DNA from: Haplodiscus bocki
Lineage: Eukaryota
Assembly: GCA_965655095.1 (NCBI GenBank)
Contig: OZ296654.1
Span: forward strand, 94,054,001 to 94,118,000
DNA length: 64,000 nt
Direction: 5' to 3'
Positions 1 to 53,185 of this stretch are shown one piece after another (position 1 is the stretch's first letter; each line of letters starts with the position of its first letter). The notes below the pieces were generated by a model. It saw only the letters and a program-made list of their open reading frames with translations. It did no database searches and had not been told where the DNA came from. Position numbers and translations under genes: made by a program.

Positions 1-931
1 ACTGATTCGTAGAGTTCTATCACAGTCAGTTCAGTTCGGCGATTCTTTTCGTTCCACACTGAAAATACGACCCAGTTTTCAGAATGGACTGCTTGTATAT
101 CCGAAATTCGTTTCATAGAAGTCGAAAAAATGATATCGCCATTTATGGAATCAATTAAGCTGAACTCGTAAAAATGTTTCGTTTCCTCGCTTGAAGAATC
201 AGGAATAACAGGGCTAACAACTAAGAAAACTATGTTGGGGTTCAGATATTTGAACAAAACTGTTCGGTCGCTTTGCACCTTGCCGGGAGAATCGACCAAT
301 TCGCCCTCTCTCTTGGCGTGAATTGATTGGATCTTGTGGGTAGGTCCAAAACTTTGTGTCCAGAGAGTTTCACCGGCACCACAGTCTTTGTATCTCAAGC
401 CGATAAGTTCAGAGACTGACTTCATTGCCATTACAATGAAAGGCTGATGTTGGAATCTTCTTCGAAATCGCTTTTTTACAAATTCAGATTTCGGGTAAAG
501 CGTTAACTCCATTTGAGAGTTAAGAATTCCAAAACTCTTGATTTCCTCCTCGTCGGCTAACTCAGGTATTGTAAAAACCTGTACAGCTTTGTACCCTTCG
601 TCTAAAATTAGTTCATAAACCTCGCCGCTTATTGGATTAAAATACACCAATGCCACATTTCCGTTCAACTTGTTTTGACCAATCACAACAGCGCGTGGTT
701 TGTATTTGTAATTGTCTGTTGTGCGCTGAACAAACAAGAACGAATTTGATTCGCCAGCTTGGGTAGCGAATGAAAAGTCTTTGAACCAATGAGACCACAC
801 TATTTTACCCGAATTGCTCAACATTCCGAGTAGCTTTCCGTTAGAGGTCAAAAGAATAACCATTTTATTGACATTGAACTTATCTCGAACTAATTCGCTG
901 TCTTCAGCACCACATTCAGTCAAGAAAGTAC
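1..931 (-). CDS. EMC1: ER membrane protein complex subunit 1, exon 2 (continues beyond window start)
   Basis: Frame read manually from acceptor cactcacag|GT at 932/931: LVRDKFNVNKMVILLTSNGKLLGM, LFVQRTT, SDRTVLFKYLNPN, HSENWVVFSVWNEKNRRTELTVIELYE, all matching EMC1 C-terminal motifs; phase 1 matches exon 1. Confidence 0.93.
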
Positions 932-935
932 CTGT

Positions 936-2991
936 GAGTGATGCGCATTTCTAGGAAAAATTTTTATCCAAATACTTAAAATGAATTTACTTCAAATGAT
1001 TCATTTTGATTTTTTGACAAAAAAAATCTGAAGGAAATCGAACAACGGACCTTTAGTATAACAATCAAGATATCAAAAGACTAGTCAACAATTTAAAAAA
1101 TTTCAGAAATGAGGATATTATTGCACTGTTTTTGAGATTCTACTGCCAACAGTTAACGCAAAACAAAAGGCGCAGAGGTACTGCAAAAAATTTTGACGTC
1201 AACGGTTCAAAGATAAAAATGCTGAAAAAAAGGCGCCCTAGGGGGCGAGGAGGCTCACTCTCCGCTCAGAAAGAAGATTATTGAACAGAACTGAAGCTTG
1301 AAAACCCTGTTCATAATAGTAACCGTGCGTTTGTATGATATATGATGCATTTGTAGCTAAAAAGATTATTTGGAGGGCAAAACAACAGAAATTTTATGAA
1401 AAGCGACCAGTTAGCTAACTTTAAAAGTTTGGCTAAATTGGGTTAAATACCATACTGGACAAAAAATTTCAGAAATCTAAAAAAAATCAAACATTGCTGT
1501 ATATTTATTACGTTGAATGCGTAGTCACTGAGTTGTTTTAGAAGGGAAAAGATCAAAATTTACCATAATATCGCGAAAACTGTTATTTTTGCCAAATCAA
1601 AGACACCATGACCTGCACTGGACGGTAAAAGAGTGAAAATTCCGGAGCCGTCATTCGTAGAACTGCAAAAACCTTCAAAGATTTAGGACTCCTCTGACCT
1701 AATCTGCTAGAAACGTTAGTTGAAATAGTTGTTCGAGAGTTGATGAAACAAAAGTGCGAAAAAACCGGAAAAGTTAAAAAATTAGCCAATTTTTGGGCTA
1801 TTTCGAAGTACCAAAATGACCAGCTTCTAAATAAAGTTTGCAGACTTGACAAACAAGTCTCACACTTTAAAATTTTCGCACAGATTGATGCTGGCTGTAT
1901 TGGTAACGAAGTGATTTGTGAGACAAATGGGCGAACATTCCGAAAAAACGCAAATACACTAGTTATTTTTTTTTACTGGAAAACAATGGACGTTTTTAAA
2001 ATCCGAAGCGGCGCACTTTCGTTCCAAACATGGGCTGGTCGCAAAATTTACGTATTTTCATACACCAACGAAACTTGCGGATTACCCACATACAACGTGA
2101 AAAAACTATTCGTTTACTAATTCCGTTAAAGGTTAAAGTTCCCAGTTAAGAAAATGAATTTCATTAGTGAAATTGAGTTCAATGGAGGCAAAAATTGCAA
2201 ATTTTACAACTTTTACACCACCAAAACGGTAAAATTGGCAAAAATTTATTGCTTACCGTTTTGAGACACTTTTCGGTTTGAAGAGCGGAAGTTACGCCGC
2301 GTATTTGATTAGCCGAGGGTTGAGTTTTCCAAAGTAGAATGTCGAAAATTATTGAATAGTCTTAAAACAACCAAAAAATGAAAAAAACGGTCTTTCTGCA
2401 CATTTACGTGGTACAAACTCTGTTAAAAACAACTGCAAAAACTTTGTATTTCTCAAAACTGATTTCTTCCGTGTCCAGAGAAACATTTTGGGCGATTTTT
2501 TTTCGAATATAGCAGGAAAGTTTTAGACTGATATCCCAACTTTTCAAACCGTCCACATTATTTCAACGATGCTTTTTTTGGTTACTACTACAACTATTTC
2601 TGCTAAGCTCATTAAGTAGTAGAGATAAATGTTCACGTTCAAACTAAGTGCAGCGATATACGAAAATCCAGAGTTCACGCGGAACTGACAAATTTACGGA
2701 TGAAAAAGTCCACAGACTGAATTCAATATTTTTCTTCTGTATGAAATTAGAACGAAAAATGAGAAACATGCTTTGGAAATCACAGCTTTTGAATGAAAAA
2801 TGCCTGAACACTTTCAATAAATCAAAAAAAGCTCACCTTTCAAGATTTCAAAGCTGCTAACGTGCTCTGCCAATTTGAAATTATGCTAAAATACTGTTCC
2901 GGTAGATGAAAAATTTCATAGATTCTTTTTGACAATTGTTGCTTCCTTTAAAATATAAAAACCCTCCAAAAACAAAAAAAGTGCATCACTC
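936..2991. mobile_element. hAT-type non-autonomous insertion that constitutes the EMC1 intron (intron 2995..932)
   Basis: Inverted repeats GAGTGATGC (936-944) / GCATCACTC (2983-2991), immediately flanked by identical 8-mers GTACCTGT at 928-935 and 2992-2999. Confidence 0.8.
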
Positions 2992-2995
2992 GTAC

Positions 2996-4433
2996 CTGTT
3001 GAGATTTTTTTATAGCTGTCAGTTACGAAATTGACAAATTGCGAAAAATGAGAAGAAATTCTGCGATAAAACATTTCTAGGATGGTGGTTTTTGCACGAC
3101 TCGCGAATTCAAAATCGGCTTCTAGAGTGATCATGGTTTCGCTTAAGTTTAAGTCACACATATCAACGTTGACTCCATAAGCTAAGGATTGATCTTTTTC
3201 CCACAAAACTGAAACTTCGCTTTCAGATGAAATTCCCAATAATGCCAAATTGTAGTCTTCAAAGGAAAACAAAACTCGTTCAAGTTTTCCGCTGTTTTTG
3301 CCGCTCACGGCAGCCACGGTGGTAACTTTTCCATGCTTCCGCAACTTTTGGGAGCCAATTATGTGTGTAAAAACTTTTTCAGCGGAATGGGTTTCAAAGG
3401 CTGTGATGGTACGTTCTGACGATTCGTCGCTGATAACACCGACTATCAGTCCTGATTTGGAGTTAGAAGTTAATATTTCGAAATGAGTCTCATAATTTGA
3501 GAACAAAGCGATATGTTCGAATTTGCCGTTCTCAATGATTCGTAGCAAAGAAGCGTGGGAATCAACATATTGAATCAGGTACATACCAGTTCCGATAAAC
3601 TTGACATCAGCAACAGCAAACTTCAGTTTGCTTTCATTTTCTTTTTCGGTTTCTGAGGATTTTCCACCGAACGCTGGAACAATACTCAGGGAATCTTCTT
3701 TCCAGCAGAATGCAAACATGCCTTCTAACTTACATTCAGAGGACGAACCCGTGATCGTCTTGATAAATTCCTCCGATTTTTCCCCAGTAGCAGCATCTAA
3801 CGTCAACACGATAACTTTGTCAGAATGTAGGGTAACCACTGCAACATTACCTTGCGAAACACCAATAGAACCTTGCAGAACATCGCTTTTCTGAGGAAGC
3901 ACGATTTTCCTCATCAAGTAAGGTTCCTCTGTTTTCAGTGAGTATGACCAAGCAGCGTTTTCATCATTTGTGAAGCATGCAATTTCTGATCTAGTAGCAA
4001 CGAAAAGACCAATGTTGGGTTTTGAAATAACACCATAATCGTCGATTGCTGAGTTGAAACTTGCTGTTTCTTGAAAGGGAATTTCCTCTCTTAGACTTCC
4101 TGAAGTTTTGTCAAACACCCGAAGAAGTCTCCTTTTCTCGTGTACAACATAGATATCTCCGTTGTCGGCTAACTCAACCCGGGATATTTCTCCATCAACA
4201 TCTCCAAAGACTTTTCTCCAAATAATTTTGCCTAATTTAGGCTCCACAAGTGCCAAAACATTCTCGGATGCAACCAATGCTCGTGACTGGCTGTTTACTG
4301 TGATGAACCTCGACCAAGTGACGCAACCGAAGTTTTCGATCAGCCAATCAAATTTGCCGACTTGGTCTTCGAACAAACTGAGAGCAGTCGGAGGGCAGCA
4401 GCATAGCAGAGATAGCAAGCAATACAATTTCAT
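2996..4433 (-). CDS. EMC1: ER membrane protein complex subunit 1, exon 1
   Basis: Within ORF 2916..4466; second Met (4433) gives signal peptide MKLYCLLSLLCCCPPTALS followed by the EMC1 hallmark LFEDQVGKFDW and GKIIWRKV; donor ACAG|gtacgag at 2996/2995 (1438 nt, phase 1). Confidence 0.93.
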
Positions 4434-6420: not shown

Positions 6421-6446
6421 CATGTCTTTCAACAATCGCCACTTTG

Positions 6447-7230: not shown

Positions 7231-8304
7231 ACAAAATACAAACGAATAAGAGTTGATATTCTTGAGTTGGAAGACTGATTACCCAATCCTACATGAAAAT
7301 GCATATAGTGAAAAGTATCTCCGCTGTTGCAAACTATCGGAATTTTTCTGACGTCATTCTCGAAAGACCGGCGCCAGCCAATAAAAAGCTAGTAAATAAA
7401 ACTCAGTGTTTCGGTTATAGCGTCATGATGATTATGCCTAATGAAGAAAGTGAGTGAGTTCTTCAAGTCATCCGCTATATTCACTCACCTATTTTATTCA
7501 TTCGGCGGGATAATAGTGACTTCGAAACGGAAAAAAACTTGAACAGATCTTAAAGTGTTCAGAACGGATTGAAAATTTAATCTGCCGATCTGGCAAATGG
7601 GTTTGATAGTTCTCAAAATGCCAAAACTTAAATGTATTCAAATTCAAAAATATGATTGAACAAGACAAAAACAACCAATTTTCGTTAACCGGAAAATATT
7701 ATTTCAACGCTTGAGTAGAAGGGCACCGCATGGTTCAGCTAGTGCTCTATTGATGTTTATGAAAAAATATATAAAAATATTGGAAAAGTCTAGTACCGTG
7801 AAACTGAACTCATCAGACAACTGAGCCATAAACCTAATAAACGTAATTCTCGCGTAAAATTAATTAATCCATGCACTCAATGTTAATAGATAAAATGCAA
7901 TAGATGCCGGTGAATTGCAAAATTGCTAACTAAATAGAAATGGACTTCCAATTTTCTGTAAGAAGAGATGCTTATTTCATCGTGACTTTTCTACTTTACT
8001 TCAATTAGTGTTTCCTGGCTTTTCCCTAATTTGTTGTTTTTCTGAATTGAAACCTAAAATTGTCCCAGTTAATCAGAGACTATACAGAATTTTTCTTCTG
8101 GTAGTTCTTACGTTGTTCGAAAAGACATTATTTAGCGATTTATTTTTAAAACTAAAGTAAACTAATAACGTTAGAAAAGCTACCTTTTGAGCAAAACTGC
8201 TCTACAATCATTTGCAATTTGTACTTGGAAGCAAATGCTCCGTCTGAGAATCTAAAACCTAACGTTACAACAATTTGCAAACTGTTTATTATTTTGAGTT
8301 GTCT

Positions 8305-8710
8305 AATATTTTCCGCCATTTTTATAATACGAGGAAGAACGCGAACGTTTGTTTACTCAAGGTTTGCCAATTGATAGTGTCAGATGTTCGACGACTAATC
8401 GGACACTTTCTGAACGTGAATTTTTTCCCCTAAATTGTAGCAAATTTGCCGTAGAATGCGCGACTGAAATAGTAAGATTTCTCAGAACGTTTAAATTTTG
8501 GGGTTTTTTCGAAAAAACCTGAATTTTTTTTCAAAATCGCTCAAGGTGGCAAATTTGCTGTAGAATGCGAATCAATTGATAGTCTTTCTTAAAAATGTCT
8601 TTATGAAGAGAGTTTTTTTTGGAAAAAAACACTTTCGGTCTTCTAAAAGGCATCTTTATCAAAATTGGAGGGCGGAAAATATGGCGTTGGCAGCCGGCCA
8701 TCTTATTATC
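8305..8710 (+). mobile_element. Non-autonomous dispersed element (DINE-1/Helentron-like); further copies at ~29725-30140 (+), ~41535-42040 (-), ~46770-47215 (-), ~48680-49105 (-), partial at ~52730-52900 and ~53780-53890
   Basis: Shared motifs ttgccgtagaatgc, ttggagggcggaaaa, gccggccatctt(g/a)tt, cgtgcaattgg; subterminal inverted attttccgcc/ggcggaaaat. The Helentron-like class is inferred. Confidence 0.6.
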
Positions 8711-9062: not shown

Positions 9063-10268
9063 CTATAGGACATTTTTGCTGCCAATTCCATTCAGAATGG
9101 GTCTCAGCTCGTTTTGCGTCGCTTCGGTTACAGCAATGACGGCACATTTGTTCACACCCACGAAGGTTCCCAGTTGTTTTGTGTCACCTGCTACCAAATA
9201 AGGAACCCCTTGTTGACCACACATCTTCGGAAATACCTGGATAACTTCAATAGGCTGCAAGTCCCCGGCTATCACGACAAGTTTGGGTTCTTTATTTTGT
9301 ATACTTTTGGCTACATCGTGGATGCCACATTTGAGTCCCTTGGGTAGGCCTTTGTCATCGCCCTGGGTTGTCTTATACGTCTTCAAAAGAGAGAACACTT
9401 TGGTTGATATCGATTGATTGGCTTTCTTCAAGTCGTTTCTCTTCGAGTCTTCCATGTTGATATTAAATTGATCTCCGAGTTGCCGGGCAACAATTTCCCA
9501 TCTTTTTGCAAACTTCTTATTCTTCCATACCCGCTTACCCTTTCCTACTTTAGAATCATTTGAGGCCATTAGTTGGTTTCTCAATTTTTTTCTCTGGTTT
9601 CTGCGCTTGCGCTTGAAGTTGTCTTCATTTTTCATCAGTATTTTGGAATCCTCGGCATTTCCTGGCATTTCCGCCGGTGTTTTCGTATCCTCGATATTAT
9701 CTTGTTTTTCGGTGGCTTTCTTGGTTTTATTTGCATTCTGTTTCTTCATGGGCGTTTTGGAACTCTGGAGATTTTCTGGCTTTTGCGCTGGTGTTTTAGA
9801 ATCTTTAGAATCTTCTTGCTTAGCCGCAGATTTCTTGGGATCTTCAGTCATTTTCTGCTTTTTATAAAATGCTTCGGAGCCCTTGAAGTTTTTGGGCCTT
9901 TTCGCCGGTGTTTTGGTATTATTCACATTATCTTGTTCTTCAACGTGTTTATTGTTTTCATCGGCATTCTTTTTCTTCAAAGGCGTTTTCGAATCCATGG
10001 CGTTTTTCCCAGGGTTCAATATTTCAGCATCGTCGGTCAGTTTTTGTTTCTTCTTAGGGGTTGTGATATCAATGACATTTTCCTTATGTTCTGTCGAAGA
10101 TAGCGCTCTCGAGCCAGCTTCGATGGTTTTGACTGCACTTTCACAACTCTCCACCGTTTTGGTAGCTTTAGATTTCCGCTTGGCGACCACTCCAGTTTTC
10201 TTTACGGGGTCAGCTTTGGCAGCAGTCTCAGCCAAAACTTCAGGTCCTTTCGTGCAACGGGTTCTCAT
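9063..10268 (-). CDS. Intronless 401-aa protein: long Lys-rich low-complexity N-terminus plus C-terminal L7Ae/L30e/S12e/Gadd45 RNA-binding domain (NHP2/RPL7A-like)
   Basis: C-terminus CGIHDVAKSIQNKEPKLVVIAGDLQPIEVIQVFPKMCGQQGVPYLV...LGTFVGVNKCAVIAV fits the L7Ae family pattern; uninterrupted ORF. Confidence 0.85.
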   Translation of the reverse strand: MRTRCTKGPEVLAETAAKADPVKKTGVVAKRKSKATKTVESCESAVKTIEAGSRALSSTEHKENVIDITTPKKKQKLTDDAEILNPGKNAMDSKTPLKKKNADENNKHVEEQDNVNNTKTPAKRPKNFKGSEAFYKKQKMTEDPKKSAAKQEDSKDSKTPAQKPENLQSSKTPMKKQNANKTKKATEKQDNIEDTKTPAEMPGNAEDSKILMKNEDNFKRKRRNQRKKLRNQLMASNDSKVGKGKRVWKNKKFAKRWEIVARQLGDQFNINMEDSKRNDLKKANQSISTKVFSLLKTYKTTQGDDKGLPKGLKCGIHDVAKSIQNKEPKLVVIAGDLQPIEVIQVFPKMCGQQGVPYLVAGDTKQLGTFVGVNKCAVIAVTEATQNELRPILNGIGSKNVL

Positions 10269-11299
10269 TTTTCAACCAAAACAAAACCTGAAGAAGAAAC
10301 CAAAATTTTGAGTTGAGAGCCCTGTCAGATATTTCAGATTTCATGATAATACCACAAGTCATTTGCATTCGTTGATCAAATTAACCAGTCAAACGGTAGT
10401 GACATAATACTAAATGGAAATCTTTATAACATTTTATAAAATGCTATAAAATGAAGGAAGTACATTGATAATGTAGGTTAAAGGCTATGAAGTGTGTACT
10501 ATTTAGTGTTGCATGATTGAACAACTTGTTTGACAACTTGGTTTATCATTTGATTGATTTTTTATGGGAGTTTTTTACGAAATGCGTCCACAACCAACAT
10601 TCTACACTCTTTTGGCAATTTGTAGTTGTTGTTACTTCCACTAAAAATAGCTGTACTATAACAGCATTAAGCTTTTTCAAGATGACATACGTCAGTAGTA
10701 TGGGTAGGGGGAGGGGTCAGGGCTATTTTGACTCCTTTGCAGTTTTACCCAATTATACGAATTTCGCAGCTTATTGATAAAGAAACTTCTCGACAGCTTA
10801 AGGACCAATGAAACTACACAAGCCAGCCCCAACTAAATTTGACAGCCGGCTCGCAGCTGAATATACATTCAGAAAATTTTGTCAAAGTCATGTTGAGATA
10901 ACAAAAACTGCTTTTGTTGAACAAAAACATCAAGAAGCAGAAAAGTTTAAATACTCACCATTAGCTCATCAAGCAGAATTGTCCAGTAAAATAAAAGTTT
11001 GAGATAAAAGTAACAAAGTTTTTTGATGAGGTATCGAGTGATAAAAATGAAAAACTTTTGATTCAGTATAAGGACAAATAAATTGCCTCCGAGGGGTCCT
11101 CCGACACACTTTACACACACGCTCACTGCAGTAGAAAACCGTAATGCAACTAACATACGCGAAGACCGGAACGGGGTTAGAACTCACTACGTTCCACGGA
11201 AAACTCCACGAAAGATGAAAGAGTAATAGCATGACCAAGAGGATCCACTGAAAATTGAGAAAATTTAACCGATATTTATTCAAATACCTTCACTAAGAC

Positions 11300-18466: not shown

Positions 18467-18612
18467 NNNNNNNNNNNNNNNNNNNNNNNNNNNNNNNNNN
18501 NNNNNNNNNNNNNNNNNNNNNNNNNNNNNNNNNNNNNNNNNNNNNNNNNNNNNNNNNNNNNNNNNNNNNNNNNNNNNNNNNNNNNNNNNNNNNNNNNNNN
18601 NNNNNNNNNNNN
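18467..18612. other. Assembly gap (146 N)
   Basis: Run of n characters. Confidence 1.
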
Positions 18613-40450: not shown

Positions 40451-43400
40451 GGCAAAAAATCCAAGAGAAAATTTCGCTCACAGTCGAAACTTGCGCCAAA
40501 TCTCACTGATGTACACATTGCTTAATTTTTTCCCCAATTCAATTGATATGCATCACTTTGGGGAATGCTGAATGCGCTGAACGTTAGAAATGGAAAAACT
40601 TAATTGAAAATTGATTTTTTGCAGAACAAAGTTCCGTTAAAATATTGTGAAAAACTATTGGCTAAAGACTGAATGGAACCAACGCTTCATATTCCATCGC
40701 CAAACCGTTATCGGGATTCCATACGGGGGATATTACGCCAGAGAAGTGCGACAAAGTACACTTGCCCTCTGAAAAAATCAGGGTTTTCAATTATTTTCGC
40801 CAATAACTCGCCGGCGAAAAAGTCTCGGCCACCCAAAATTTCAGCCCCGTCAATTACGACATTGCCAGTGTAGCTCAGCAATAAGTCAACGGATCCTACA
40901 AATGCGTTTGTAGAAAATGAACGTCAGTGCCAAGAAACGCAGTGGGCAATGGGGAATGTCGAAAAGTTCAAAAATTTCAGCTTTTTTTTGACGGAAACTG
41001 GCCGAAAAAAAATGTTGGCAAGAAATATCAGAACACGCATTTCCAAGCTTCCTGTAGAGACAAGACTCAAAAATATACCTTTTGCCCTCCAAGAAATCCG
41101 AAAATTGAAATTTTCATCGTTAACAACTCGCCGGAAAAAATTCGGCGGCCAAAAATTGGAATACGATAGATTGTGAGCCCGTCGTAATGTTTTTACAAAA
41201 TTTGGGTAAATCTGACCAATAGGTGCCGAGAAGATTACATTCGAAGAGATGAAAATCAGAGGGAAGTCAAGGACGGAAAAAAATGAAAACACTTTGACGT
41301 GTCCTTGTGTGAATAGGCTTCACTCCGTTCGCCTAACAAAAGGAGTTAGTGAAGGTTGCAGTTCCTACAAAGCACTGATGATGACCCAACGCGGAAGCTT
41401 GTCAAACGCTTTCGATACGTCTGAGAAAACTTTGATATAGTAATGATCGATATTTTGAACTTCGACAAAAAAGTTGTCAGCAAAAACGCGCCATTGAAAT
41501 ACATGATTTTTTTCTCAATCCAAACTGAGTTGGTAACAAGACGGCCGGCTACCACCCGCATTATTTGCGCCTTTCGAATTTGGTTAAAATATGATTTTGA
41601 AACATGAAAACGTTTTTACCTCGGAAAATAACATTTTTCCATCATATTTTCTAATTTTCAATAACGTTCAAAGTTGCCAAAGAAACCACATATTGAGGGC
41701 TGAAAACACATTTTAAAGAAATATTACTATATTATACATATTCCACAGCAAAGTTACTACCTTTGGCGATTTTCAAAAAATTCAAGACTTTTTTTTCGAA
41801 AAACCCATCTATTTTTCAAAAAAACCTCAAATTTTCAACCTTTCGAGAAATTTTACTACTTTACTGTCATTCTATGGAAAATTTGCAACAATGTGATGAA
41901 AAAAATGACATTCAAACACGTGAACAACAGATGTTGGCTCGTCCACGCGAGCTCAATTGGCAAATACCGAGAAAAAAAACGCACCCATTTGAGAGGAAGA
42001 TTTTGTTTTCCATATTTTCAATATGGCCCAAAATATTAAATTTGTTGAATAAATTGGGAGTAGATACTTCTTGCTAAAGACTAATCTCTCAAATAACCTC
42101 AATACAACTGGAGTAATAGAGACAGGTCCTAAATTAAATACATTACTAGGGTCCTACCCTTCGGGTATTGGAATAACTCGGGTAAAGCACGTTTGAACAA
42201 TTCTGTAAAGAAGCCAAGCTCTAAATAGCTATGGGTTCTGATAAAAACATTGCATTTTCTTTGAATATAGTAATTCGTCCCATCTAGGAGCCGATGATTT
42301 CATACGAATAAATTCGTAAACTACAATAACACTAAATAAAGGTTGGTTATATCTCAAAAGACTCGGAAACTGATGATGTCATCCAAGTTGTCAGTTATAG
42401 ACATCACAAAGGTTTTGTTCAACCAAAATGTGGGAGATCAGTCTCCAGATATGAATCATCTATGATACATAACTTACTTTGATTCCACCGCCGTTTGCTT
42501 CCTGTTTTGTTGTTTCTACTAATGGCTGATTTGGCAATCAAAGTCTTGATGGTGCTTTCATACTCTTTAGCCTTTTCTATTCTTCCATGTTTCTAAAGTT
42601 TATTCTTTTAGGATGGGCAAGTTTTCTTGTGGCGTCATATCTGGTGGATCTGTACTAGTGATGACAAAGACTTTTCTTGGACAAAATGTGTCAAAACAGA
42701 AGTAAGCCCATAAATTAATCAAGTTCAGAAAACTGAATCAAAAAATTTCTCCTATGTTTCTTTGGATAAAGAACGTGATATCATGTCTATTCGTGATTTT
42801 CGCTGATCTCAGATTTTAACTTTCTGTTTCTGAATTCAGTTGGCAGGAAAGTAAAATTGTTTGATGATCTGAAGGAGCGGAGGGCTTCAGGCCTTCAGCG
42901 TCAGACTCTATCAACATTTGAAGCTAATACGTTATCCAGCACCTTATTGCCTCTACGAGAAGGTTTTCGTAGGCTTGTCACGTTTGTATATAGAAAGATG
43001 TTTTCAAGGGAATAATCATTCAAGCCTCCAAGTAACAAAAATTTGTAAGAAGGATAGACATCAGTGAGTGTCTATCATTTAATCTATCAACTCACTGCAG
43101 CAGCTATCGCTCGGATGATAATATACTGAGCGTAAGATCAGACGAATATCAGTAAAACCCAAAATAAACCATAAAATTTCAGCTACAGGAATGTCCAATA
43201 TTTTGAAAGTAACATTTTTTTGAATAGAAAGAAAGACTACAACCATGAGTTTTCGTGGAATTACAACAATTTCTGTCATGTCTAAAAATACTATAGCCAG
43301 ATAATGCAAGTTGATCATAGTGAACAATTTCATTTAACCAGCTTTCAACAATGCATGTAACACAACTTTACGTGAGGGCATCTGCAGCAATAAGTTCAAA

Positions 43401-44996
43401 AGAGTTGCGCTTGTTGAGAAAGCTACTATTTAAAAGCATAAAAATCAAAGTGTTGATATCTAGTCACAAACTCACTAGAACCTCTTTGTGAAAAAACGGA
43501 AACTTCGCTCGATATTAGATTCTTCTTTTGGTATTCCGCTCTCTAGCATATGCAAATGTTTCTTCAAAACCTTTTCCATTTCAAGTTCCCTTGCTGTAAG
43601 TTGAAGGGCTATACTGATCTTTTCATCAGCAAAATCTTCGAGCTTAATAACATTGCAAATAATTCGTTTTGCCACATACGTAGTAGTGTATCGTAACACG
43701 AATTTTTGTCAAATCTGAAGATATCACTAACACTATTCATAACATCTTGATTTAGAAAATAAAAAACGTTAGATACACATAGGTAGATCGATCAATCAAT
43801 CCCATCGATTTTTTTGTCGGTTTCCGATACGTTTGAAATGCGGATCTGAATAATAAAGGGAGGAATCGTATGAACATTCCCTCTCACGTTGTTGCTGCTA
43901 TGTTGGCGGATTGTCTACTTTCGCTAGTGCTGGTTTCAAAGAATAAACCTGTTTTGTATTTAGCATTTCATTTTGAGAGAATTAACAGCTTCTAAGGCAC
44001 AGAGTTTCCTTCCGCAAATTTTATTTGAGATGAAACTCCTTCGAAAACACACACATTGTTGTCTTTCTTTTTTTGGTTTTATTGAGACATTTACTCAATT
44101 CTTTGTCTGAGGCTTCAGGTAATTGTCCCACAGTCGAGCAATAGCTAGAATCGACAGAATCCAGACGGAATCTCTCCGCCTATCCTCCTGCTTGGGAGCC
44201 ACCACGCCTGCTCCCTCCACCATTCCTATATGAAAAAAAACTATTTATAGGTTTATCACAAAAAGCAGAATTCAGTCCATGCAATGGGCCAGAGTGCGAG
44301 TATCAGATTTTGTTCTTTCCGCTTGCATTCGTACCCAGTTTTGCTAATCATTCCTTCTTGGTGTTCTTTTCGGACCGCACCGCGGCCGCTAACAAACAAC
44401 GCAGCTGATAAGATCAGGCGGCGGCTGAGTAAATAGGTCACAACGGTCCGCTCGTCTAATATTCTCTTTATTATTTTCAGACGCACGCTCTGGAGAAAAA
44501 AAAATTCTCTACACTCCTTCAAATTTTTCTAAGCCTATAGCTTCCCGAGAACTGTAGCCTCAAAAACGCCGATTTTTGCTCAGGAGTTCACTTGAAAATC
44601 CTTACTGCAGTCTTCAACACTTATTACATAAATATACTTCACCAAGGGCTTGGCTCTTGGAACGAACACTGCCGAAGCTATTTCTGTACATCAACTCTAA
44701 TGTTAAACATGTTTAGCAATTCACTTGGTCTTTGCTAACAAAGTGTTTGATTTTCAAATTAACACTTTTTATTTTTGGATGAACACTAAGTTGAAAATCC
44801 ATGAAATCTATCAAGTCTGGCAGTTCAATTTTCGGAACATTTAGGGGTCAACGACTTATTTTGGAATTTCTTCGACTCCACAGGTTCCAGATGCCTTGGA
44901 TATCTCTGCAAAGAATGAAGCACAATTCTTTAGGAGTCTTTTAAATCAAACTTGCAGAAATTTTGATATATTTTTCAACGAAATATTTGGTTGTCT

Positions 44997-46419
44997 CAGG
45001 TTGGCCACATTTAATTCGAAGAAAAAGGGACCTTGCGAAGCCTCATAAAAAGGGACCAATAAGGGACCTGAAATTAACCCGTAAATAGAAAAACGGACGT
45101 TTAAGGGACCCTCTTTTATACTTGAATTGTAAGAGGCACTACTAGAAAAAAAATAAATGTTAACTTAAGAACTGAATTTTCAGAATTCTATTTAAGCGCA
45201 AGAGATTGTGACCAGTAACTTTGGTCCATTTAAACAGAATACATTATAACAGACATTATAACAGAGGCCTTGGGCACTCAGAGAAACCAGGTCGATGGTG
45301 CGTCGCGTTCTTTCATTAACATCGCTTTGCGGCTTCCAAGGTCAGATACCAGCTTCCGAGCTTGCTCAAGCTCATTGTTGGTCGCTGTGATATCCCGCTG
45401 AACCGTCAGTGTTGACTTTGTTTGACACCATCATATGTTTCTGTGGTCATATTGCTTCGGTAACTTGTCTCAGTTGTCTTCATCAGTGAAAATGCGGATT
45501 CGACAATCATGTTGTGAGTAGAAACTAGTAGGCAGGACGATATGAGCTTGGTCACAACGGGGAATGATTCAAGAAACGCCAGCATAGACTCATATAGAGA
45601 AAGAAACCGAACCGAAGTATACACGGGATAGTTAACGACGTCGAGAAAGTCGGAGCACTGTTTCATTATCGATTATCTTGGGACACTGTTGTTCCATCAG
45701 TGCCCGAAATCCTGACTTCCGACCAAGCATTACATTGCAATTATCTGTCATAAGATACACTAAATTAGATAAATCCAGATTGTGCTGCTGAAGGGCTGCC
45801 ACGGTCGCATTAAAGACGGCGGTCTCACTGTCCACCAACTTAATATCATCAATGGACTTTACAGAACTGCTAGATTTGATAAAACAGTGGTGGCTCTGGC
45901 ATTTGCTATCTCGATTGTAACTTGATTCCCTAAAAAATATTGCATTATTGAACGCAAAGGTCTATTTATTGTATTTTAATATTCACCTGAGTGTACTGCT
46001 TCAGAAGTAACATGGACGACGTAGGTTTGATGTTGCTCGAGAGATCCACATCCCTTCTTAACAGACAGAATCCTGCCGTCATATCTGCATTTGACATGAT
46101 GTTCGTCACCCGGTATCCTCACTGCCCATCGGAATTTCGACAGAAGCGTCTCAGTAACCTTACATACACCCATCTGAAAAACAAATGTTTCAGACCTGTT
46201 TCAAATAGGTCTGAAACATTTGAAAATAGGCTATTTGGCAACAATATACAAGAAATTCCGCAGTTGATGTTTAGGTATACAAAAAAGTTATTATCAAGCT
46301 AATACACATTAATGATCTGTTCTAAATGTGCCTAAATTGATCAACCCTAGGTCCCTTAAAAAGGGACTTTTGAATGTTAAGGGACCAGGTCCCTTAAAAA
46401 AGACCAAGTGGCCACCCTG
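44997..46419 (-). mobile_element. Internally deleted hAT DNA transposon (1423 bp) with TIRs and 8-bp TSD
   Basis: TIRs CAGGTTGGCCAC / GTGGCCACCCTG; TSD GGTTGTCT at 44989-44996 and 46420-46427; subterminal AGGGACC/GGTCCCT repeats; transposase pieces: BED-like finger (45976-46173), LMTDNCNVMLGRKSG (45632-45838), hAT dimerisation-like FPVVTKLISSCLLVSTHNMIVESAFSLMK (45406-45666). Confidence 0.92.
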
Positions 46420-47249
46420 GGTTGTCTTATGGGCTTTTTGACACAAGAACAATGAAAGTCGGTCGTTTATTTTTTGGGGCAGATGGACACTAGAGGCATT
46501 TACAGTGGCATCCTACCCAAAATCTGCCACAAAAACTTGCCGCAAGTTTGAGTATTTCAGGGCAGTGGACACTTTTAGCAGATGTTATGGAGAAAATTTC
46601 ACGAGTTTTTCTCCAAGTCATCTTCATTTTGGAGCAAGTCGTATCTTGATGACTCACGCAAGCAGCCATCACCGCATTTTTACGAACGAAAAGAAAAACC
46701 TGGAAAACGGGATATTCCACCTCTTCCACCATGCAGACATCACACAAACTTCAAAAGATAAATCTGAACAAGACACCCGGCTACCACCAGGATATTATTC
46801 GCCCTCCAACTTTGTTGAAGATGCTTTTCAGGGTGAAAGCGCTATTTTTGGAAAGAAAACTCCCTGAATTTTCTAATTTTCTGAAATGCAAAAATGCTTT
46901 GTTTTCCAAAGCTACAATTTAAGTAGGAAAAAGACATTTTGAAAAATAGCATCACTTGATACTCACCAAATTTCCCACCTCAACAGATTTTGAATTATTT
47001 CAAGATTTTTCTCAAAAAATCCCAAATTGCGTACATATTTAAAAAATTCTCTACTTCAGTCTGATTCTAAGGCAAATTTGTTACAATTTGGTGATTAAAA
47101 AAGTTTTCAAATTCCGGACATTCGGACATTTTCAATTGGCAAGTAAACATCAAAAAAAACTCACTCGTTGAGAGGATGATTTTCTTTTCATATTTAATTA
47201 TGGGCGGAAAATAATTAAACAAGCAATCGAAATAAAATATACCGCCCAG

Positions 47250-48121
47250 TTAAGCTTCCTGCTCTTTTCATCGACGACATCTTCATTGAAAGTGGGTCCA
47301 AACTACTAGTCGAAAGTTCTGTGACGGCGAGGCATGAACTCACGTTCTGTTTCATACATTTCGTTTTTGCCGCCCGTTCGGAACAACGAATAGTACTCCC
47401 TCTTTTCTGCACAAACCAGTGGGACAAACAATTTATGAAGGCCCAGTGTTGTTGTCTATAACCACAACTTTTGCTTTCTTTTTGATAATTTAACGCACAT
47501 TCTTGAGACATTTCATATTTTCAAATTTTCATGGACATTATCTTATTTCTCCGTTGAAATTTTTTGAACCTCTGCCACAATTTTCTTTGCTTTTTGGCTC
47601 GTCGCCCTTTTTGGAACAATGGCATGTGTTAAATTCAATTTCTCCGCAATAAGATTGTTCGAAGATTTCGGTTCTTTTTCTTCGCAGTTTTTGGTCAATT
47701 TTTGTCCTTCGTTTGTTGGCTTTTATCGCTTCGATGACTCAATTCTTTTGAACAATCGGTTATCAATCCCAAAGAACTCTGAGAACTATTGACTCCGTGG
47801 GGTTTAACAAAATTCTTCGCGATATTTGCCAAACTTTTCTTTTTCGTCAACTTGCGTTTGAAATTTGAACTCTTTCATATTTTTGGCTTGGCTCTTCTGT
47901 TGACGATTTCGACGAATTGGTGAATTGAGGAATATCCTAATCAGCTCTCAATGAAACAGTTTTTGTCAGTTCCTTTTTAGTGACAACAGAGCTGAAAATT
48001 TTGAGAGTGATCCAGTAGAATTATTCTGCATGCTTTCAAATTTGAAGTATTTTTTGGGAGTAGGCTTTCGTTGAGAGCAAATTTTAGGTCCTACTGCAAT
48101 TTTTCCTATTGCCAACAAAAC
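47250..48121 (-). pseudogene. Pseudogene of a basic-N-terminus / L7Ae-domain gene (probable paralog of 9063..10268)
   Basis: From 47516 the frame reads MKCLKNVR*IIKKKAKVVVIDNNTGPS*IVCPTGLCRKEGVLFVV, then frameshifts to SSCLAVTE..LDPL; 5' context ttcag|gttttgttgg resembles that of the intact gene, with ATA where ATG is expected. Confidence 0.65.
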
Positions 48122-50338
48122 CTGAATTCAAAAAAGACAAGCATAAAGGATGCTAGACATCAAACGCCCAGAATTTAGCACAGAAAGAAGTCAGCAAAAC
48201 TAACGGACAGTTTTCAAAAAGCAGAAAATATCATGTGATGAAAACTTTAGAATTTAAAATCTGAATGACTCAGCAGTCCCATCAACGGCATTACGACAGC
48301 AACACGAAAATTGATTGAATCATTAAGCATTCACCGAAACTGAGGCAAACGTGCTACGCAAAATTATGAATAAGGACAATATCTACATCTCGGAAAGTAA
48401 AAATAAAACGTTGGGCATTTCAGCATTCATTCATCTTTCGCTTAGGAGGTGGTTTCGATTTTTTTCAAACAGCGGAAAAAAGTAAAAATCATTCGGCCCA
48501 GCTGCTATCGTTTACTGCTTGAAGAGTTTGGAAGATGGACCGAAACAATCAGTTAGGGAGTCAACAGTTTCTTCATGCCAAACGAGCTCAGAAAAGCTCA
48601 AAGTCGGCGCTGCTCATCATTTGAGCGCGAAAATTTGGGTAAACCATAGAGGGGTATCACACAAATTTGGTCGATTAAGAAAGAAGACGCCCAGCTACCA
48701 TAGGGATATTTTCCACCACCAATCTTTGTTAAAAAGTGTTTATAGCAAAAATTACTCTTTTTTACATCCACATTGATACTTTTACCGATTTGAAAAACTT
48801 TCATTTTTTAAAAAAATCTCAAACTTTGGTCGGAAAAAGCGTATTCAAGAAAAATTACCCGTTTCAAGGTATTCTGCAGAAAATTTTTTTATTTCCCAAA
48901 AAATCGGAATTTATAGTCTAGTTAAAGTGGTCCTTTTTGTCCAAACATTTTCCCGCCATTTTATCGGGAATCTTTGGCGCCTTCTTGACGAATTGCACGT
49001 TTGACTTCACGTATCGTTGCGTGCAATTGGCAAGTTCATGTCAAGAAAACCTAATGCTGACTGAATGAATTTCTTTTTATATGAAATATGGACGGACGGA
49101 AAGTAATGCAAAAAAGAAGTGACTACAACAGTTGGCTTTTCCTACAAAAGTGCCGACTAAAAGTCAGACGAAAAATTGAATATTTAAATTGTGATGAAAA
49201 GACGATTCGAGTTTTGAATTTGATAATTCTAAGAATCGGTTCCTGAAAAAAGAGACCCAGCAAAGAAAGCTTACGACCAAAGAAAACAGCATGGACGCCA
49301 TGAACAAAAACGAAGCCAGTTTAACTCGATAGAATTCGAAATTCAGTTCAGAAGAAGTGATAAAAAGTCACTATTTTAGCGAAAGCAGCAAACAAGATGA
49401 ACACAAAAATTTAATTTTACGGTCAACATTGAAAAAATTCGATTTTTAGTCAACATTTTACGTACGTAAAAAACCTTCTTTTACATATAACTCGTTTTTT
49501 CCACTGCTAAAAGGTCCAAAAAGTTTTGACAAAGGTTTATGGCCAATCCAACAAAATGACTGGTACTGTAAAAGGCTCCGGTGGTCTAGCGCGTAGGACA
49601 AAAGGTTTGTAAGCCATACGGGTTCGAGACTATTAATACTTTTTTTTTCGAGATAACACCTATTTTTGTTGTTTTTCTTCAATACCCTCCCCCATATTTC
49701 ATGAAACCCGCTTATACAATTTAAGCTTTTGCAGATAATACCACACCGCAGATTTGAACGTGTTAATTATCTTTAAAAGATGAGATTTCTGTTTAAATTT
49801 GATCAACGGATAGTCGAGAGGTTGAATCATCCGAAAATTTCTTTCCAAATCATTTGTGCAATTCAGTCAATTTTGCATCAAAAACAGCCACGGACTTTAG
49901 TTGGAAAGAATGAACTGAACGATATTTTTCGTCACAAACTATCAGCAAAAATTTCGCCAATCACTTTGTAATCAATAATCGCAACACAACACATTTCACA
50001 AATGATCATTGTTTTCTGCCATTATTCAGTGTGCGAGAACAATCATCCTTTCGTTCTATGCCTTTTTTAGGTATACTTAGCCCATTGCAATATTTCGAGT
50101 TGAAATATTTCAACCACCAAATTGGTCGTAGAATGCGAATTAGAGTACTATAGGTGAAAATCACCCAAAAAGTGTTAGATTTGCAGTACAATGTGTAAAA
50201 ATGCAAAAATTTCCTCGAAACGTTCATTTCAGGAACAATTCAAAGGGCTTTCAATAACACAAACATTTATTGGTAAATAAAGATTACAAATGAAAATTAT
50301 CAAGTAACCAAACTTTTCTCGTAAAGATTCTCATATCT

Positions 50339-51198
50339 TCAATTGTCATTATTAGTACTAGAAACAATGCCTCCATTAGAACCAGCTGAAATATGCTCCG
50401 TTGTCTCTGCGTTTTCAATTTCTACGGAACTTGATCGCAAGTTTGAGGAACTGGAGACCTCATTTTGAGGAGGCCCCGAATCGGATGTCGTTCCGCTAAC
50501 TACAGGCGGTGGAGGATTCCAATAATGCGATGTATCCACGTATTGGTCGCTGTTGTCATCAAAACCATCATCATCGTTATCGTATTCATCGTCAAAGTCG
50601 TCATTGCTAAAACAATCTGAAGCACCGTTCAAAAACTCGGAACCACTGCCCAGATCTCCTGAAGAAGGCGACATCTCTTCTATCGAGATCCGACATCCGG
50701 AAGACTCCACAGATTTTTGGTTTTGGGTCGTTACAGAAGCATTACTTTTGGAATCCGACTGAAATTGTTGTGACCTCTGTGAAGAATCCATCGTCGATGT
50801 ATGTTTTTGCGGCATTTTTCCAGAAGTTCCGAAGTTACTTTTGTACTGCGATGTGCTGGAGGCGTCCGAAAAATTGGAAGTCATTTTTGGACCGGAGATC
50901 TGGCCCTGAAAGTTAGGCGCTGAGTTCCAGTAGCTACAAGGAAAATTTTGCGGTTTTTGGGCCCCGTTTTGATTTGGGACCGAAATTGTTGTGGATGTTG
51001 TTGTTGTAGCGGGGTCCGATAAAGCTATGACGCCGTCGGTTGTCGTGAAGTTTGATTTGAAACAGACAGTAATGAATTTTCCCACAGGGTATTCAAACCC
51101 GTTCAGTTTTTCTTTGGCGTATAAAGCATTCAGAGGTGTTTTGTACTTAGGGAAACAACATGCCATCTCATCCTTGTTTTCGGTTTTGTCAGCACCAC
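50339..51198 (-). CDS. RBM45: RBM45-like RNA-binding protein, last exon (second half of RRM3 plus Ser/Asp-rich tail)
   Basis: KYKTPLNALYAKEKLNGFEYPVGKFITVCF matches the RBM45 RRM3 signature (AIYAKxKLHGFEYPPG); acceptor gatcag|GT at 51199/51198; minus-strand AATAAA at 50266-50271. Confidence 0.8.
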
Positions 51199-51597
51199 CT
51201 GATCAGTGATGACGATAATCATGAAAAGCAAGGATAACTTGTAAATCCAGAAGAGGCAATTTTGAAGTCAACTTTTTTTTGCAAAACTTCAGTTGGCACT
51301 TCATGCCTACACAAACAAAAATGGTTCGGACAAACAAATTTTGTGCAAAAATTCTGTCTTAGGAACACTATTTTCATTCGTTAGAAACTTGAACTTGTGA
51401 GTTGCCAAATACTGTCAAACCGAAAGGTATCAAGTGTTGAGTTCAGATGAAGCGAAAAAGTCAATGATTTTGAAAACATAGAGACCACAAGTGATAGTCT
51501 TTGAAACGTGGGCAAAATTCCAAAAGCAACAGACAGTTAAGTTTAAGTCACTCATCTGGTAATCTTTGAAAAATGACCATCACTGAAGTTTACCCAC

Positions 51598-51859
51598 CCA
51601 GCTTGATTTCTTCCAGCCCGGGCACAATATCGAACAGTTTGTACAGCTGTTCATTGGTGAGAGAAGAGTCGTATCTCACGACCAAGTCTCTGTGAGGAAG
51701 ACCCAAAATGGTGGATGCCATCATATTCTGTTCCCATGTTAATTTCCCACAGACTGATGGGTTTTCCGGGAATACAGGAGTACACCCGGCACTAACAGAA
51801 CTACTCTGGGGAGAGGGTTTCCCGCCGAAAGTTGCGAGTTTGGCTGAAGATGCTGTACA
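51598..51859 (-). CDS. RBM45: RBM45-like internal exon (first half of RRM3)
   Basis: Manual translation RDLVVRYDSSLTNEQLYKLFDIVPGLEEIKL (RBM45 FDIVPGLE motif); donor G|gtgggt at 51598/51597; acceptor at 51859 or 51852. Confidence 0.8.
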
Positions 51860-52923
51860 CTTTTTTAGTGATGTCCATTTAACTTCACGTAATATTGATC
51901 AATCATTTTGTGGTTAAAAAAAGAGTCGTAATGAAACAAAAAATACATTATTTACCCAAAGGTCAACGATCTTAGTTCAAAAATAGGACACTCTTGGAAA
52001 GTTCGGAGTCAAGCATTGAAGAAAATTTACGCTTCCAGACAATGTGCCAGAAATAAACTTTCGAATTTTAACGTATTTCCAATTGTCACTAACAGTTTTC
52101 AAATTATTATTCATTGGCTCATGGACGTTTTGAATACCTAATCTTCTCACTCCGTAAGATATGCTATCAAGGTTGCACGAGAGAATCTAAATGAAAAATT
52201 TCATGGCAAAAAGTTCTTGTCTGGCGTTGCTTGAACATAGAACATGACTAAAAATGGCAATTCACATTTTTGAGACTAAACTGAATCATTCAAGTTTGAA
52301 AATTGTTGCATCTTTCAAAAAATTTAAAGAACCACTTGAACTACCCACTAAATGACTCTATTGTTGTAAATCTTTGTAGTTAATGAACATGCAAATCATA
52401 GTAATGTAGAACTTTCTCGTTAAAACAATTAATTGTCTAGCTTTGAGATCGACAGGTTTCAAGTTCGATCACTCCTATCGCCATGGCTTTTTTACGTTTC
52501 AGTTAACTCTCTTTGCCACGGTAAGCAATGCAAACTTTGCAACAAACCACAAATGGCCATTCGAGTGTTCATTAACACAGGCCCGTGTAACTCCGTGATA
52601 ATTTCCGCCTTCCAAATTGCGGAAGAAAGGTTAAAATGCCTTAATTCGAACTAAAAATGTGCAAGCTTGCATCCAAAATCTTTTTTTTTGCAGAAAAGCC
52701 TAAATTTAGACAATAAAAACTATTTTTTTTGAGAAAGACGACAGCTAGACGCATTCTACGGGAAATTTGGAAAAAAATGGAGAAAATTTTTTGCGTGCAC
52801 TTTTGCTTCATCGTGCAATTGGCAAAGCTGGTGTAAAGAATCTGAATGTTGAACAAATGATTTTCCTTCCAAATATGAAACATTGGGCTGAAAATAATAA
52901 ACTAAAAAAGGGACATCACTTTC

Positions 52924-53185
52924 CTTAACGGTATAATCACTAGCCGGACAGGTAGCAGCGATAACCGGGTGGAACCTGGCTACAGTGTTTGTTTCGACAG
53001 CCTTCGCAGCGGAAGAGGGTTTTTCGAACTTGATGATAGCGCTGCCACTCGGCTCCAAAGTGGCGCTGTTCCTCACTATGTTCACAAACTCTATCGTCCC
53101 GAACTCAGAGAAGTGTGCATTGAGAGAGTCTTCCGTATCCGTGGGTTGCACCGAAATGCGTAGCTTTTTCAGTTTATCCAGATAC
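52924..53185 (-). CDS. RBM45: RBM45-like internal exon (RRM2); 3' boundary ambiguous (52930, 52924 or 52920)
   Basis: LRISVQPTDTEDSLNAHFSEFGTIEFVNIVRNSATLEPSGSAIIKFEKPSSAAKAVE; acceptor ggcag|GTAT at 53186/53185. Confidence 0.8.

What the first reader, a model, noticed from the sequence alone, without database searches (positions are those of the whole stretch)
928..52929. Candidate family of transposon-derived introns whose ends are clamped by a shared AGTGATG...CATCACT stem
Seen: of four complete introns definable in two unrelated genes, three carry the same inverted repeat within about 15 nt of both splice sites, always AGTGATG at the 5' end and CATCACT at the 3' end. EMC1: GAGTGATGC/GCATCACTC (2991-2983, 944-936). 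RBM45-like intron B: AGTGATGTCC/GGACATCACT (52920-52911, 51876-51867). Intron C: TCAGTGATG/CATCACTGA (51586-51578, 51211-51203). Bases flanking the 7-mer differ between introns but stay complementary within each intron, and each 5' arm is followed by a T-run. Interiors (2064, about 1064 and 399 nt) show no similarity by eye, and none of these acceptors has an adjacent polypyrimidine tract. Known: hAT TIRs begin YARNG and make 8-bp TSDs; intron-generating transposons (introners) exist in several eukaryotes. Inference: a hAT/MITE family seeded these introns, and the TIR stem was retained while the interior decayed because it juxtaposes weak splice sites.
Basis: partly seen in the sequence, partly recalled or inferred. 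Interest (0 to 1): 0.93.

Follow-up and report, generated by a model that had tools for sequence, protein, structure and literature searches.

The report
Transposon-born introns clamped by conserved stems
In what is probably an acoel worm genome, several introns are closed by short inverted repeats starting AGTGA: one is an exact transposon insertion that uses its target-site duplication as splice sites, and two older ones keep the stem through compensatory changes in a sister species, so the stem looks functional.

Summary
All six arms sit at the stated coordinates. A fourth intron just outside the window, EMC1 i2, has related arms.

**EMC1 intron 1.** It has the layout TSD-TIR...TIR-TSD, with ACAGGTAC matching 8/8. 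Splicing from the GT of one TSD copy to the AG of the other restores the reading frame. The intron is absent from a sister species, from a Symsagittifera-like acoel whose EMC1 has no introns, and from sea urchin. It is therefore a lineage-specific gain by a transposon.

**RBM45-like introns B and C.** These are older. The sister species (4-fold-site d about 1.0, intron interiors unalignable) has introns at the same positions. Those introns also have terminal stems built on the same cores, with 5 compensatory pair changes and 2 wobble-compatible changes. That points to selection on an RNA stem.

- Intron B as drawn (GT 52929 to AG 51853) is out of frame. The orthologous donor in this genome reads GA.
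- "Always AGTGATG at the 5' end" follows automatically from any inverted repeat and adds no evidence.
- The T-run is weak evidence.
- hAT membership is not shown: no transposase was found, and only one TSD.

**Limits.** No RNA-seq exists for this organism and no genome-wide test was possible. The assembly gap is intergenic and irrelevant. The scan's first-stage notes on other pieces of this genome (s1-356307, s1-366646) report similar introns; I did not check them.

The parts
2992..2999 (-). Upstream copy of the 8-bp target-site duplication ACAGGTAC. Its GT (2995-2994) is the donor of EMC1 intron 1.
   Evidence: 8/8 identical to the copy at 928-935, and flush with the TIR.
2983..2991 (-). 5' arm (TIR) GAGTGATGC of EMC1 intron 1. 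It extends to 11 nt if one mismatch is allowed.
   Evidence: The stem forms in the full-length fold with base-pair probability 1.00.
932..2995 (-). EMC1 intron 1 (2064 nt), equal to the element (936-2991) plus one TSD length.
   Evidence: The spliced frame is colinear with the sister species (ISKGTFLTE), which reads straight through this site. The intron is absent from the intronless Symsagittifera-like gene and from sea urchin. It is present in both sequenced samples.
936..944 (-). 3' arm (TIR) GCATCACTC of EMC1 intron 1.
928..935 (-). Downstream TSD copy ACAGGTAC. Its AG (933-932) is the acceptor.
53186..54437 (-). RBM45-like intron A. It has no terminal stem. GCAGGTA is repeated at both junctions (7/8 as an 8-mer). 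A copy of a dispersed repeat is nested at 53801-53895.
   Evidence: The sister species reads through this site (PDESEQARYLEKL).
52911..52920 (-). 5' arm AGTGATGTCC of intron B (14 nt if one mismatch is allowed).
   Evidence: Base-pair probability 0.99.
51860..52929 (-). Intron B, drawn at its widest in-frame canonical extent. The true donor is unresolved: GT 52929, GA 52923, or GT 52919 paired with AG 51854-53.
   Evidence: Frame analysis. The sister species has AAG|GTAAGT where the window has AAG|GAAAGT.
52744..52880 (-). High-copy dispersed repeat nested inside intron B (about 70-100 times single-copy depth).
   Evidence: Depth and loose ends. Other copies occur in the window and in the sister species. 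Its homology does not clearly reach the arm.
51867..51876 (-). 3' arm GGACATCACT of intron B.
51578..51586 (-). 5' arm TCAGTGATG of intron C. In RNA it extends by two G.U pairs.
   Evidence: Base-pair probability 0.97.
51199..51597 (-). Intron C (399 nt, phase 1, GTGGGT...TCAG).
   Evidence: Frame analysis. The sister species has an intron at the same position and phase (L007 16747-17447).
51203..51211 (-). 3' arm CATCACTGA of intron C.
18467..18612 (.). Assembly gap. It is not part of the feature.
   Evidence: non-coding flanks, far from both genes. It was left unfilled.

Best explanation
These are spliceosomal introns made by DNA transposons with short terminal inverted repeats that begin (C/n)AGTGA. 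After the insertion, the two repeats are kept as an RNA stem that closes the intron.

**Shown.** EMC1 intron 1 is one element plus its 8-bp target-site duplication. The insertion hit ACAG|GTAC. The GT of the upstream copy and the AG of the downstream copy are placed so that splicing removes the element plus 8 nt and restores the original codons.

**Shown.** Introns B and C of the RBM45-like gene already existed in the common ancestor with a sister species. Both species keep a terminal stem on the same core (TGATG/CATCA for C, TGTCC/GGACA for B). Flanking pairs have been swapped in a compensatory way, and everything else in these introns has diverged beyond alignment.

**Inferred.** B and C, and also EMC1 intron 2, began as the same kind of element. 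The stem is selected because it brings together, or marks out, weak splice sites: donors GTACGA, GTGACC, GTGGGT and GA/GT, with no strong polypyrimidine tract. This would work like the terminal pairing of euglenid nonconventional introns or structured teleost introns.
For: **Arms and statistics.**

**EMC1 intron 1.**
- TSD 8/8 flush with the TIRs.
- Absent from the sister species, from the Symsagittifera-like gene, which is a single 2910-nt ORF, and from sea urchin, whose nearest introns are more than 25 aa away.

**EMC1 intron 2 (L002 14697-15417).**
- Arms GTGACCACT/AGTGGTCAC.
- By my reading of the flanks, the stem extends to 14 bp with one G.U pair. The reverse complement of the 3' arm reads CAGAGTGACCACT.
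- Absent from the sister species.

**Introns B and C.**
- Shared positions with the sister species.
- Stems in the sister species of 11 and 13 bp with at most one mismatch (P = 0.02 and 0.0024). Its eight other introns show at most 9.
- Covariation table: 5 compensatory changes and 2 one-sided G.U changes.
- 4-fold-site divergence p = 0.555, d about 1.0, and no alignable interior.

**Folding.** All six stems appear in the full-length minimum-free-energy folds, with base-pair probability 0.5-1.0.

**No sign of DNA-level excision.** DNA runs show no joint that skips B or C.
Against: - No RNA-seq exists for this organism. All junctions rest on reading frames and homology.
- Only 5 introns of this species and 10 of the sister species were examined.
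- B and C have no TSD, and their donor-to-arm plus arm-to-acceptor distances are 15-16 nt rather than 8.
- The interiors share nothing, so "one family" rests on 5-7 terminal bases.
- No second copy of any element and no transposase was found.
- In intron 2 the stem buries the donor, which would normally inhibit U1 binding.
- Eight sister-species introns and intron A splice, presumably, without any stem.
- The covariation comes from two species, aligned on 5-nt cores chosen by eye.
Confidence: 0.6

Rival explanations
1. The stems are a host splicing or processing signal that evolved in place and has nothing to do with transposons. The shared AGTGA(T/C)G would reflect a sequence constraint, such as a protein or snRNA binding site or a cryptic donor-like GTGA. 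The EMC1 "TSD" would be just the protosplice consensus CAG|GT seen at both junctions.
For: - B and C are old, lack TSDs and show RNA-type (G.U) covariation.
- CAG|GTAC donors recur in four introns of the two species, with or without repeats.
- No second copy of any element was found.
Against: - In EMC1 intron 1 all 8 positions match, not just AGGT, and the repeat abuts the inverted repeat to the base.
- That intron and intron 2 are absent from every orthologue examined.
- The arms resemble CAGTG/CAGAG transposon ends (from general knowledge of hAT ends; for the sequences).
Confidence: 0.2
2. All of these are simply leftover TIRs of transposons that happened to become introns, and the stem has no function.
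For: - EMC1 intron 1 alone needs nothing more than this.
- Intron 2's stem covers the donor, which looks unhelpful for splicing.
- Many introns here lack stems.
Against: At d about 1.0 a neutral 9-13-bp repeat should be gone in both lineages. Instead both species keep the B and C stems, with compensatory and wobble changes, while the interiors are unalignable.
Confidence: 0.12
3. The intervening sequences are removed at the DNA level (precise excision as in ciliate IESs) rather than by RNA splicing.
For: The TSD-TIR...TIR-TSD layout would allow it. Intron B may lack a GT donor.
Against: - Genomic DNA contigs of four runs from two samples are continuous across B and C, with no skipping joints.
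- EMC1 with its intron is held at 0.97-1.00 of sampled words in all four runs.
- GT...AG lies exactly where the reading frame needs it in 4 of 5 introns.
Confidence: 0.03
4. Chance resemblance among a few AT-rich intron ends.
For: Small sample; short motifs.
Against: The probabilities, and the recurrence of the stems in the orthologous introns of a second species.
Confidence: 0.02

Closest known systems
Introners / introner-like elements with TIRs and TSDs (Micromonas, Aureococcus, Symbiodinium, Polarella; Huff 2016; bioRxiv 10.1101/2020.10.14.339549; PMC9860276; PMC12130899)
   Same: - The intron equals the element plus the TSD.
- Splice sites are recruited from the TSD. Polarella classes 13 and 14 take both from an AGGH TSD, and some classes have 8-nt TSDs.
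- Positions are lineage-specific.
- GA donors appear in young introns.
   Different: - No family of sequence-similar copies is shown here; only the ends resemble each other.
- The host is a bilaterian, probably an acoel. Gozashti 2022 found introners in only two animal groups, and the P. naikaiensis genome paper reported no introns made only of TEs.
- The stems persist in old introns and covary.
Euglenid nonconventional introns
   Same: Terminal complementary bases (often CAG/CTG) pair to bring the intron ends together. TSD-like repeats sit at the junctions. A MITE origin is suspected.
   Different: The euglenid introns have non-canonical borders, are excised as circles and are removed by an unknown machinery. 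Here 4 of 5 introns are GT-AG and presumably spliceosomal.
Fritillaria borealis MITE-derived non-canonical introns (Henriet 2019, as summarised in PMC11282704 and PMC13326754)
   Same: An animal lineage with high intron turnover. Species-specific introns carry TIRs and TSDs.
   Different: Fritillaria introns are mostly AG-AC or AG-AT and depend on a changed U2AF/snRNA system. Here the borders are canonical, except possibly intron B.
Structured introns whose end-pairing helps splicing (yeast long introns; teleost (GT)n/(AC)n introns)
   Same: Pairing near the donor and near the 3' end shortens the effective intron.
   Different: Those stems are not transposon ends, and no shared terminal motif is involved.
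hAT superfamily DNA transposons (Ac, hobo, Hermes, Tol2)
   Same: An 8-bp TSD. Ends resemble CAGTG/CAGAG (intron C, intron 2 and the sister species' intron B).
   Different: No transposase was found. The first base is G or A in two introns. Only one TSD is available.

Membership tests
Introner (transposon-generated spliceosomal intron) | Intron borders coincide with element ends (TIRs) flanked by a TSD. | tested here: met
   Met for EMC1 intron 1 only: ACAGGTAC 8/8, flush with 9-11-bp TIRs. Introns B, C and 2 have arms but no TSD (0-4 of 8; and my reading).
Introner (transposon-generated spliceosomal intron) | Many sequence-similar copies in the genome, a large share of them being introns. | tested here: inconclusive
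   The interiors are unrelated and only AGTGA-type ends are shared. Within 64 kb all three such repeats are introns.
Introner (transposon-generated spliceosomal intron) | Position absent from orthologues (recent gain). | tested here: met
   EMC1 introns 1 and 2 are absent from the sister species, the Symsagittifera-like acoel and sea urchin. Intron A is absent from the sister species. B and C are shared with the sister species, so they are not recent.
Introner (transposon-generated spliceosomal intron) | Removed from the mRNA at the predicted junctions. | not testable with these tools
   All four runs that hold the locus are genomic DNA and no RNA run was found.
hAT superfamily | 8-bp target-site duplication. 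| tested here: met
   One case only, EMC1 intron 1.
hAT superfamily | TIRs beginning YARNG. | tested here: inconclusive
   - Fits: intron C CAGTG, intron 2 (3' arm) CAGAG, sister-species intron B CAGTG.
- Does not fit at the first base: EMC1 intron 1 GAGTG on both ends, intron B AAGTG at the 5' end and TAGTG at the 3' end.

hAT superfamily | Autonomous partner encoding a hAT transposase with the same ends. | tested here: not met
   ORFs inside the introns and a hAT-looking ORF at 45409-45961 give no Pfam hit. The AGTGATG/CATCACT pair at 42657/46950 does not extend beyond the 7-mer. Only this window was searched.
Structure-assisted (end-paired) introns | Terminal complementarity beyond chance, predicted to form in the full-length RNA. 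| tested here: met
Structure-assisted (end-paired) introns | Pairing conserved through compensatory substitutions in orthologous introns. | tested here: met
   Two intron pairs, 5 compensatory and 2 G.U-compatible changes, at d about 1.0. Only two species.
Structure-assisted (end-paired) introns | Splicing depends on the stem. | not testable with these tools
   Needs minigene mutagenesis.
Fritillaria-type non-canonical MITE introns | Predominantly non-GT/AG borders. | tested here: not met
   Four of five introns have in-frame GT...AG. Only intron B may use GA.

The most novel reading that the evidence does not exclude
Acoel genomes run an ongoing cycle. Cut-and-paste transposons with (C)AGTGA ends keep creating new introns, wiping out any shared intron positions between related species. 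Their inverted repeats are co-opted as near-obligatory RNA clamps that stand in for weak or even non-GT splice signals. This would be a structure-guided mode of spliceosomal splicing in a bilaterian, possibly with local re-insertion that moves introns by a few codons.
Probability: 0.25. Interest if true: 0.85.

Novelty: new variant of a known kind. Interest (0 to 1): 0.7.

Why it matters
**Rarity in animals.** Transposon-made introns are well documented in algae, dinoflagellates and fungi but hardly at all in animals. One acoel genome paper looked for introns made only of TEs and found none.

**What is seen here in one gene.**
- A caught-in-the-act case in which both splice sites come from the TSD.
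- Complete turnover of intron positions among three related genomes: EMC1 has 0, 2 and 6 introns, none shared.

**Evidence for function.** The transposon's inverted repeats outlive the rest of the element as a selected RNA stem. If this holds genome-wide, acoels would be a tractable animal model for two questions: how new introns are born, and how RNA structure can compensate for poor splice signals.

Tried and rejected
- **RNA evidence.** Both run searches returned only genomic DNA runs. Laying them gave flat depth and no spliced joints.
- **SINE or tRNA head inside intron B.** ARAGORN found nothing and Rfam found nothing.
- **High-copy repeat in B as owner of the AGTGATG end.** Alignment of nine copies shows that homology starts about 20-30 nt further in. 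The GTGATG in the copy inside intron A is a coincidence.
- **Autonomous hAT at 42657-46950.** The arms do not extend and there are no Pfam hits.
- **Metagenome scan for the repeat core.** It returned four chance hits.
- **A 2065-bp element in the sister species with a 13-bp repeat, GTTGTGATGAAAA (L001 4120-6184).** It has no internal similarity to the EMC1 element and no TSD.
- **Protein search with the last RBM45-like exon.** It came back blank.
- **Walking left along the contig.** It reached a Maverick-like element and no genes, so I stopped.
- **CATCACT as a branch site.** The A would lie only 4-5 nt from the AG in EMC1 intron 1 and in intron C, which is too close.
- **Looking up the ENA analysis accession numbers in papers.** No hits.
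Full report
**What is in the sequence.**

All three genes-in-question introns lie on the minus strand.

AGTGATG and CATCACT each occur only six times in the window, against about four expected. Half of those copies are the intron arms. No other GTGATG...CATCAC pair within 8 kb forms a repeat of 9 nt or more.

Two random 40-mers from this window carry a perfect complementary run of 9 nt or more with P = 0.0073. Four of the five introns I could define in this species do, so chance is excluded.

The assembly gap at 18467-18612 lies in non-coding DNA far from both genes. No claim here crosses it, and I did not try to fill it.

**Gene models.**

EMC1 reads 4466 down to 2996, then an intron at 2995-932, then 931 down past the window edge.

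A second public assembly of the same species (L002) continues to the left. It shows a second EMC1 intron, "i2" (L002 14697-15417). The spliced protein has 982 aa.

The other gene is RBM45-like. Its best solved relatives are 7csx and 7csz, E = 6e-15. Its introns are:
- A: 54437-53186.
- B: see below.
- C: 51597-51199.

Three combinations keep the frame:
- GT 52929 with AG 51861-60.
- GA 52923 with AG 51861-60.
- GT 52919, inside the motif, with AG 51854-53.

No RNA data can decide between them. Every run that holds this DNA is genomic: depth is flat over exons and introns and there are no spliced joints.

**EMC1 intron 1 is a transposon insertion.**

The junctions read ACAG|GTAC-GAGTGATGC ... 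GCATCACTC-ACAG|GTAC. That is an 8-bp direct repeat, identical at all eight positions, lying flush against 9-bp repeats (11 bp if one mismatch is allowed).

Splicing from the GT in the first copy to the AG in the second removes the element plus exactly 8 nt.

The resulting ...ISTGTFLTEC... is colinear with the sister species, whose DNA reads straight through this site (...ISKGTFLTE...).

The intron is present in both sequenced samples.

**Who the organism is, and how intron positions behave.**

An exhaustive HMMER search gave three tiers of relatives:
- A sister species at 67% identity.
- A protein in the same 90%-identity cluster as Symsagittifera roscoffensis EMC1, at 39% (E = 1.5e-92).
- Everything else at 26% or less.

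The window's GC content, its few long introns and its Gypsy/CR1 content fit published acoel genomes. The genome is therefore probably an acoel.

EMC1 intron counts differ sharply between these genomes:
- The Symsagittifera-like contig has one uninterrupted 2910-nt ORF.
- This species has two introns.
- The sister species has six.
- No position is shared. Introns 1 and 2 also do not match any sea-urchin intron.

Intron A is likewise absent from the sister species.

Divergence at 4-fold sites between the two species is p = 0.555, or d about 1.0.

**The older introns keep their stems.**

Introns B and C occupy the same positions and phases in the sister species (L007). The interiors there give no significant alignment.

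Both sister-species introns nevertheless have terminal stems:
- CGCCATGATGGTT / AACCATCATTGCG, 12 of 13 paired, P = 0.0024.
- TGCAGTGTCCA / TGGACACCGCA, 10 of 11 paired, P = 0.02.

The eight other introns of that species stay at background level.

I anchored the comparison on the shared cores, TGATG/CATCA for C and TGTCC/GGACA for B:
- The C pair shows two compensatory double changes. It also shows two one-sided changes that stay paired only as G.U, meaning only in RNA of the sense strand.
- The B pair shows three compensatory changes.

A neutral 9-13-bp repeat should not survive d about 1.0 in both lineages. The stems therefore look selected.

All six stems appear in minimum-free-energy folds of the complete introns (400-2064 nt), with pair probabilities of 0.5-1.0.

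**Is it one family, and is it hAT?**

The arms share AGTGA:
- G-AGTGATGC (EMC1 intron 1).
- A/T-AGTGATGTCC (intron B).
- TC-AGTGATG (intron C).
- Intron 2: GTGACCACT/AGTGGTCAC. By my reading, the reverse complement of its 3' arm is CAGAGTGACCACT. The stem extends to 14 bp with one G.U pair, and it includes the donor and four exon bases.

CAGTG and CAGAG ends together with an 8-bp TSD fit hAT. Beyond that the evidence is lacking:
- There is only one TSD.
- No transposase was found.
- No second copy of any element was found.
- Two introns start with G or A instead of Y.

The 70-100-fold depth in the 5' part of intron B belongs to a dispersed repeat nested inside the intron. Its homology does not clearly reach the arm.

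The constant orientation of the motif is automatic for an inverted repeat. The T-run after the 5' arm is only marginally enriched, and it is absent from the sister species.

**Verdict.**

- The transposon origin is well supported for one intron and plausible for the others.
- The idea that the repeat is retained as a functional stem gains real support from the cross-species comparison.
- How the stem acts is inference.

Introners with TIRs and TSDs, euglenid end-paired introns and Fritillaria MITE introns are the nearest known things. What is new is the host lineage and the long-lived, covarying stem on otherwise canonical introns.

First-stage notes on other pieces of this genome report similar introns: s1-356307 on DHPS and s1-366646 on LEO1. 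I could not check them.

**Limits.**

- Fifteen introns from two species.
- No transcript data.
- No genome-wide test.
- The species identity is inferred.

Noticed in passing
window 2995/932 vs L001 11406; L002 14697 vs L001 16309; window 54437 vs L007 about 7983: Each of the three introns specific to this species has a sister-species-specific intron only 12, 24 and about 30 nt away. This is too close for independent random gains (roughly 0.1% jointly, by my estimate). It could reflect insertion hot spots or local re-insertion of intron-forming elements.
   Followed up: partly
L001 11390-11421: In the sister species, the first 16 nt of EMC1 intron r1 (GTACTGTCCCTTAAAG) resemble the last 16 exon nt before it (GGAACTTTCCTTACAG). 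This looks like a small tandem duplication at the donor.
   Followed up: no
L007 13798-16617: A sister-species RBM45-like intron appears to use a GC donor (CAG|GCATGG). Its ends are partly complementary (GCATGGAAT/ATTGCATGC). Together with the possible GA donor of intron B, this hints at tolerance for non-GT donors in this clade.
   Followed up: no
window 52744-52880, 53701-53943, 48919-49166, 47020-47261, 41847-42034, 29709-29827, 8288-8485; L001 15500-15578, 2559-2643: A dispersed repeat family with the core TTATTTTCCGCCCATATTT...TTGCCAATTG. It is high-copy and young in this genome (about 70-100 times depth at 95% identity or more) and is also present in the sister species. Its type is unknown.
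   Followed up: partly
window 51902-52283 (intron B interior): In the second sample (run X4), a 2280-nt contig matches only up to 51901, and nothing covers 52037-52203. This may be an allelic indel inside intron B that leaves the arms intact.
   Followed up: no
L009 1064-1618 (just left of the window): An ORF with a protein-primed DNA polymerase B domain (PF03175), lying in a run of same-strand ORFs. This is probably a Maverick/Polinton element.
   Followed up: no
window 23677-24834 (-): A 386-aa ORF rich in Lys, Pro and Ala, built from 17 copies of a 30-nt tandem repeat. It gives only weak matches to extensin-like and histone H1-like profiles.
   Followed up: no
window 45409-45961 (-): Two overlapping ORFs whose sequence looks by eye like a hAT C-terminal dimerisation region (...VESAFSLMK...). 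Pfam gave no hit.
   Followed up: partly
L001 4120-6184: The sister species has a 2065-bp stretch bounded by a perfect 13-bp inverted repeat, GTTGTGATGAAAA, upstream of its L7Ae gene. It has no TSD and no similarity to the EMC1 element.
   Followed up: partly
window 9066-10271 (-) vs L001 8521-8739: The L7Ae-domain gene lies next to EMC1 in both species, so this synteny is conserved. Only the L7Ae domain itself is alignable.
   Followed up: partly
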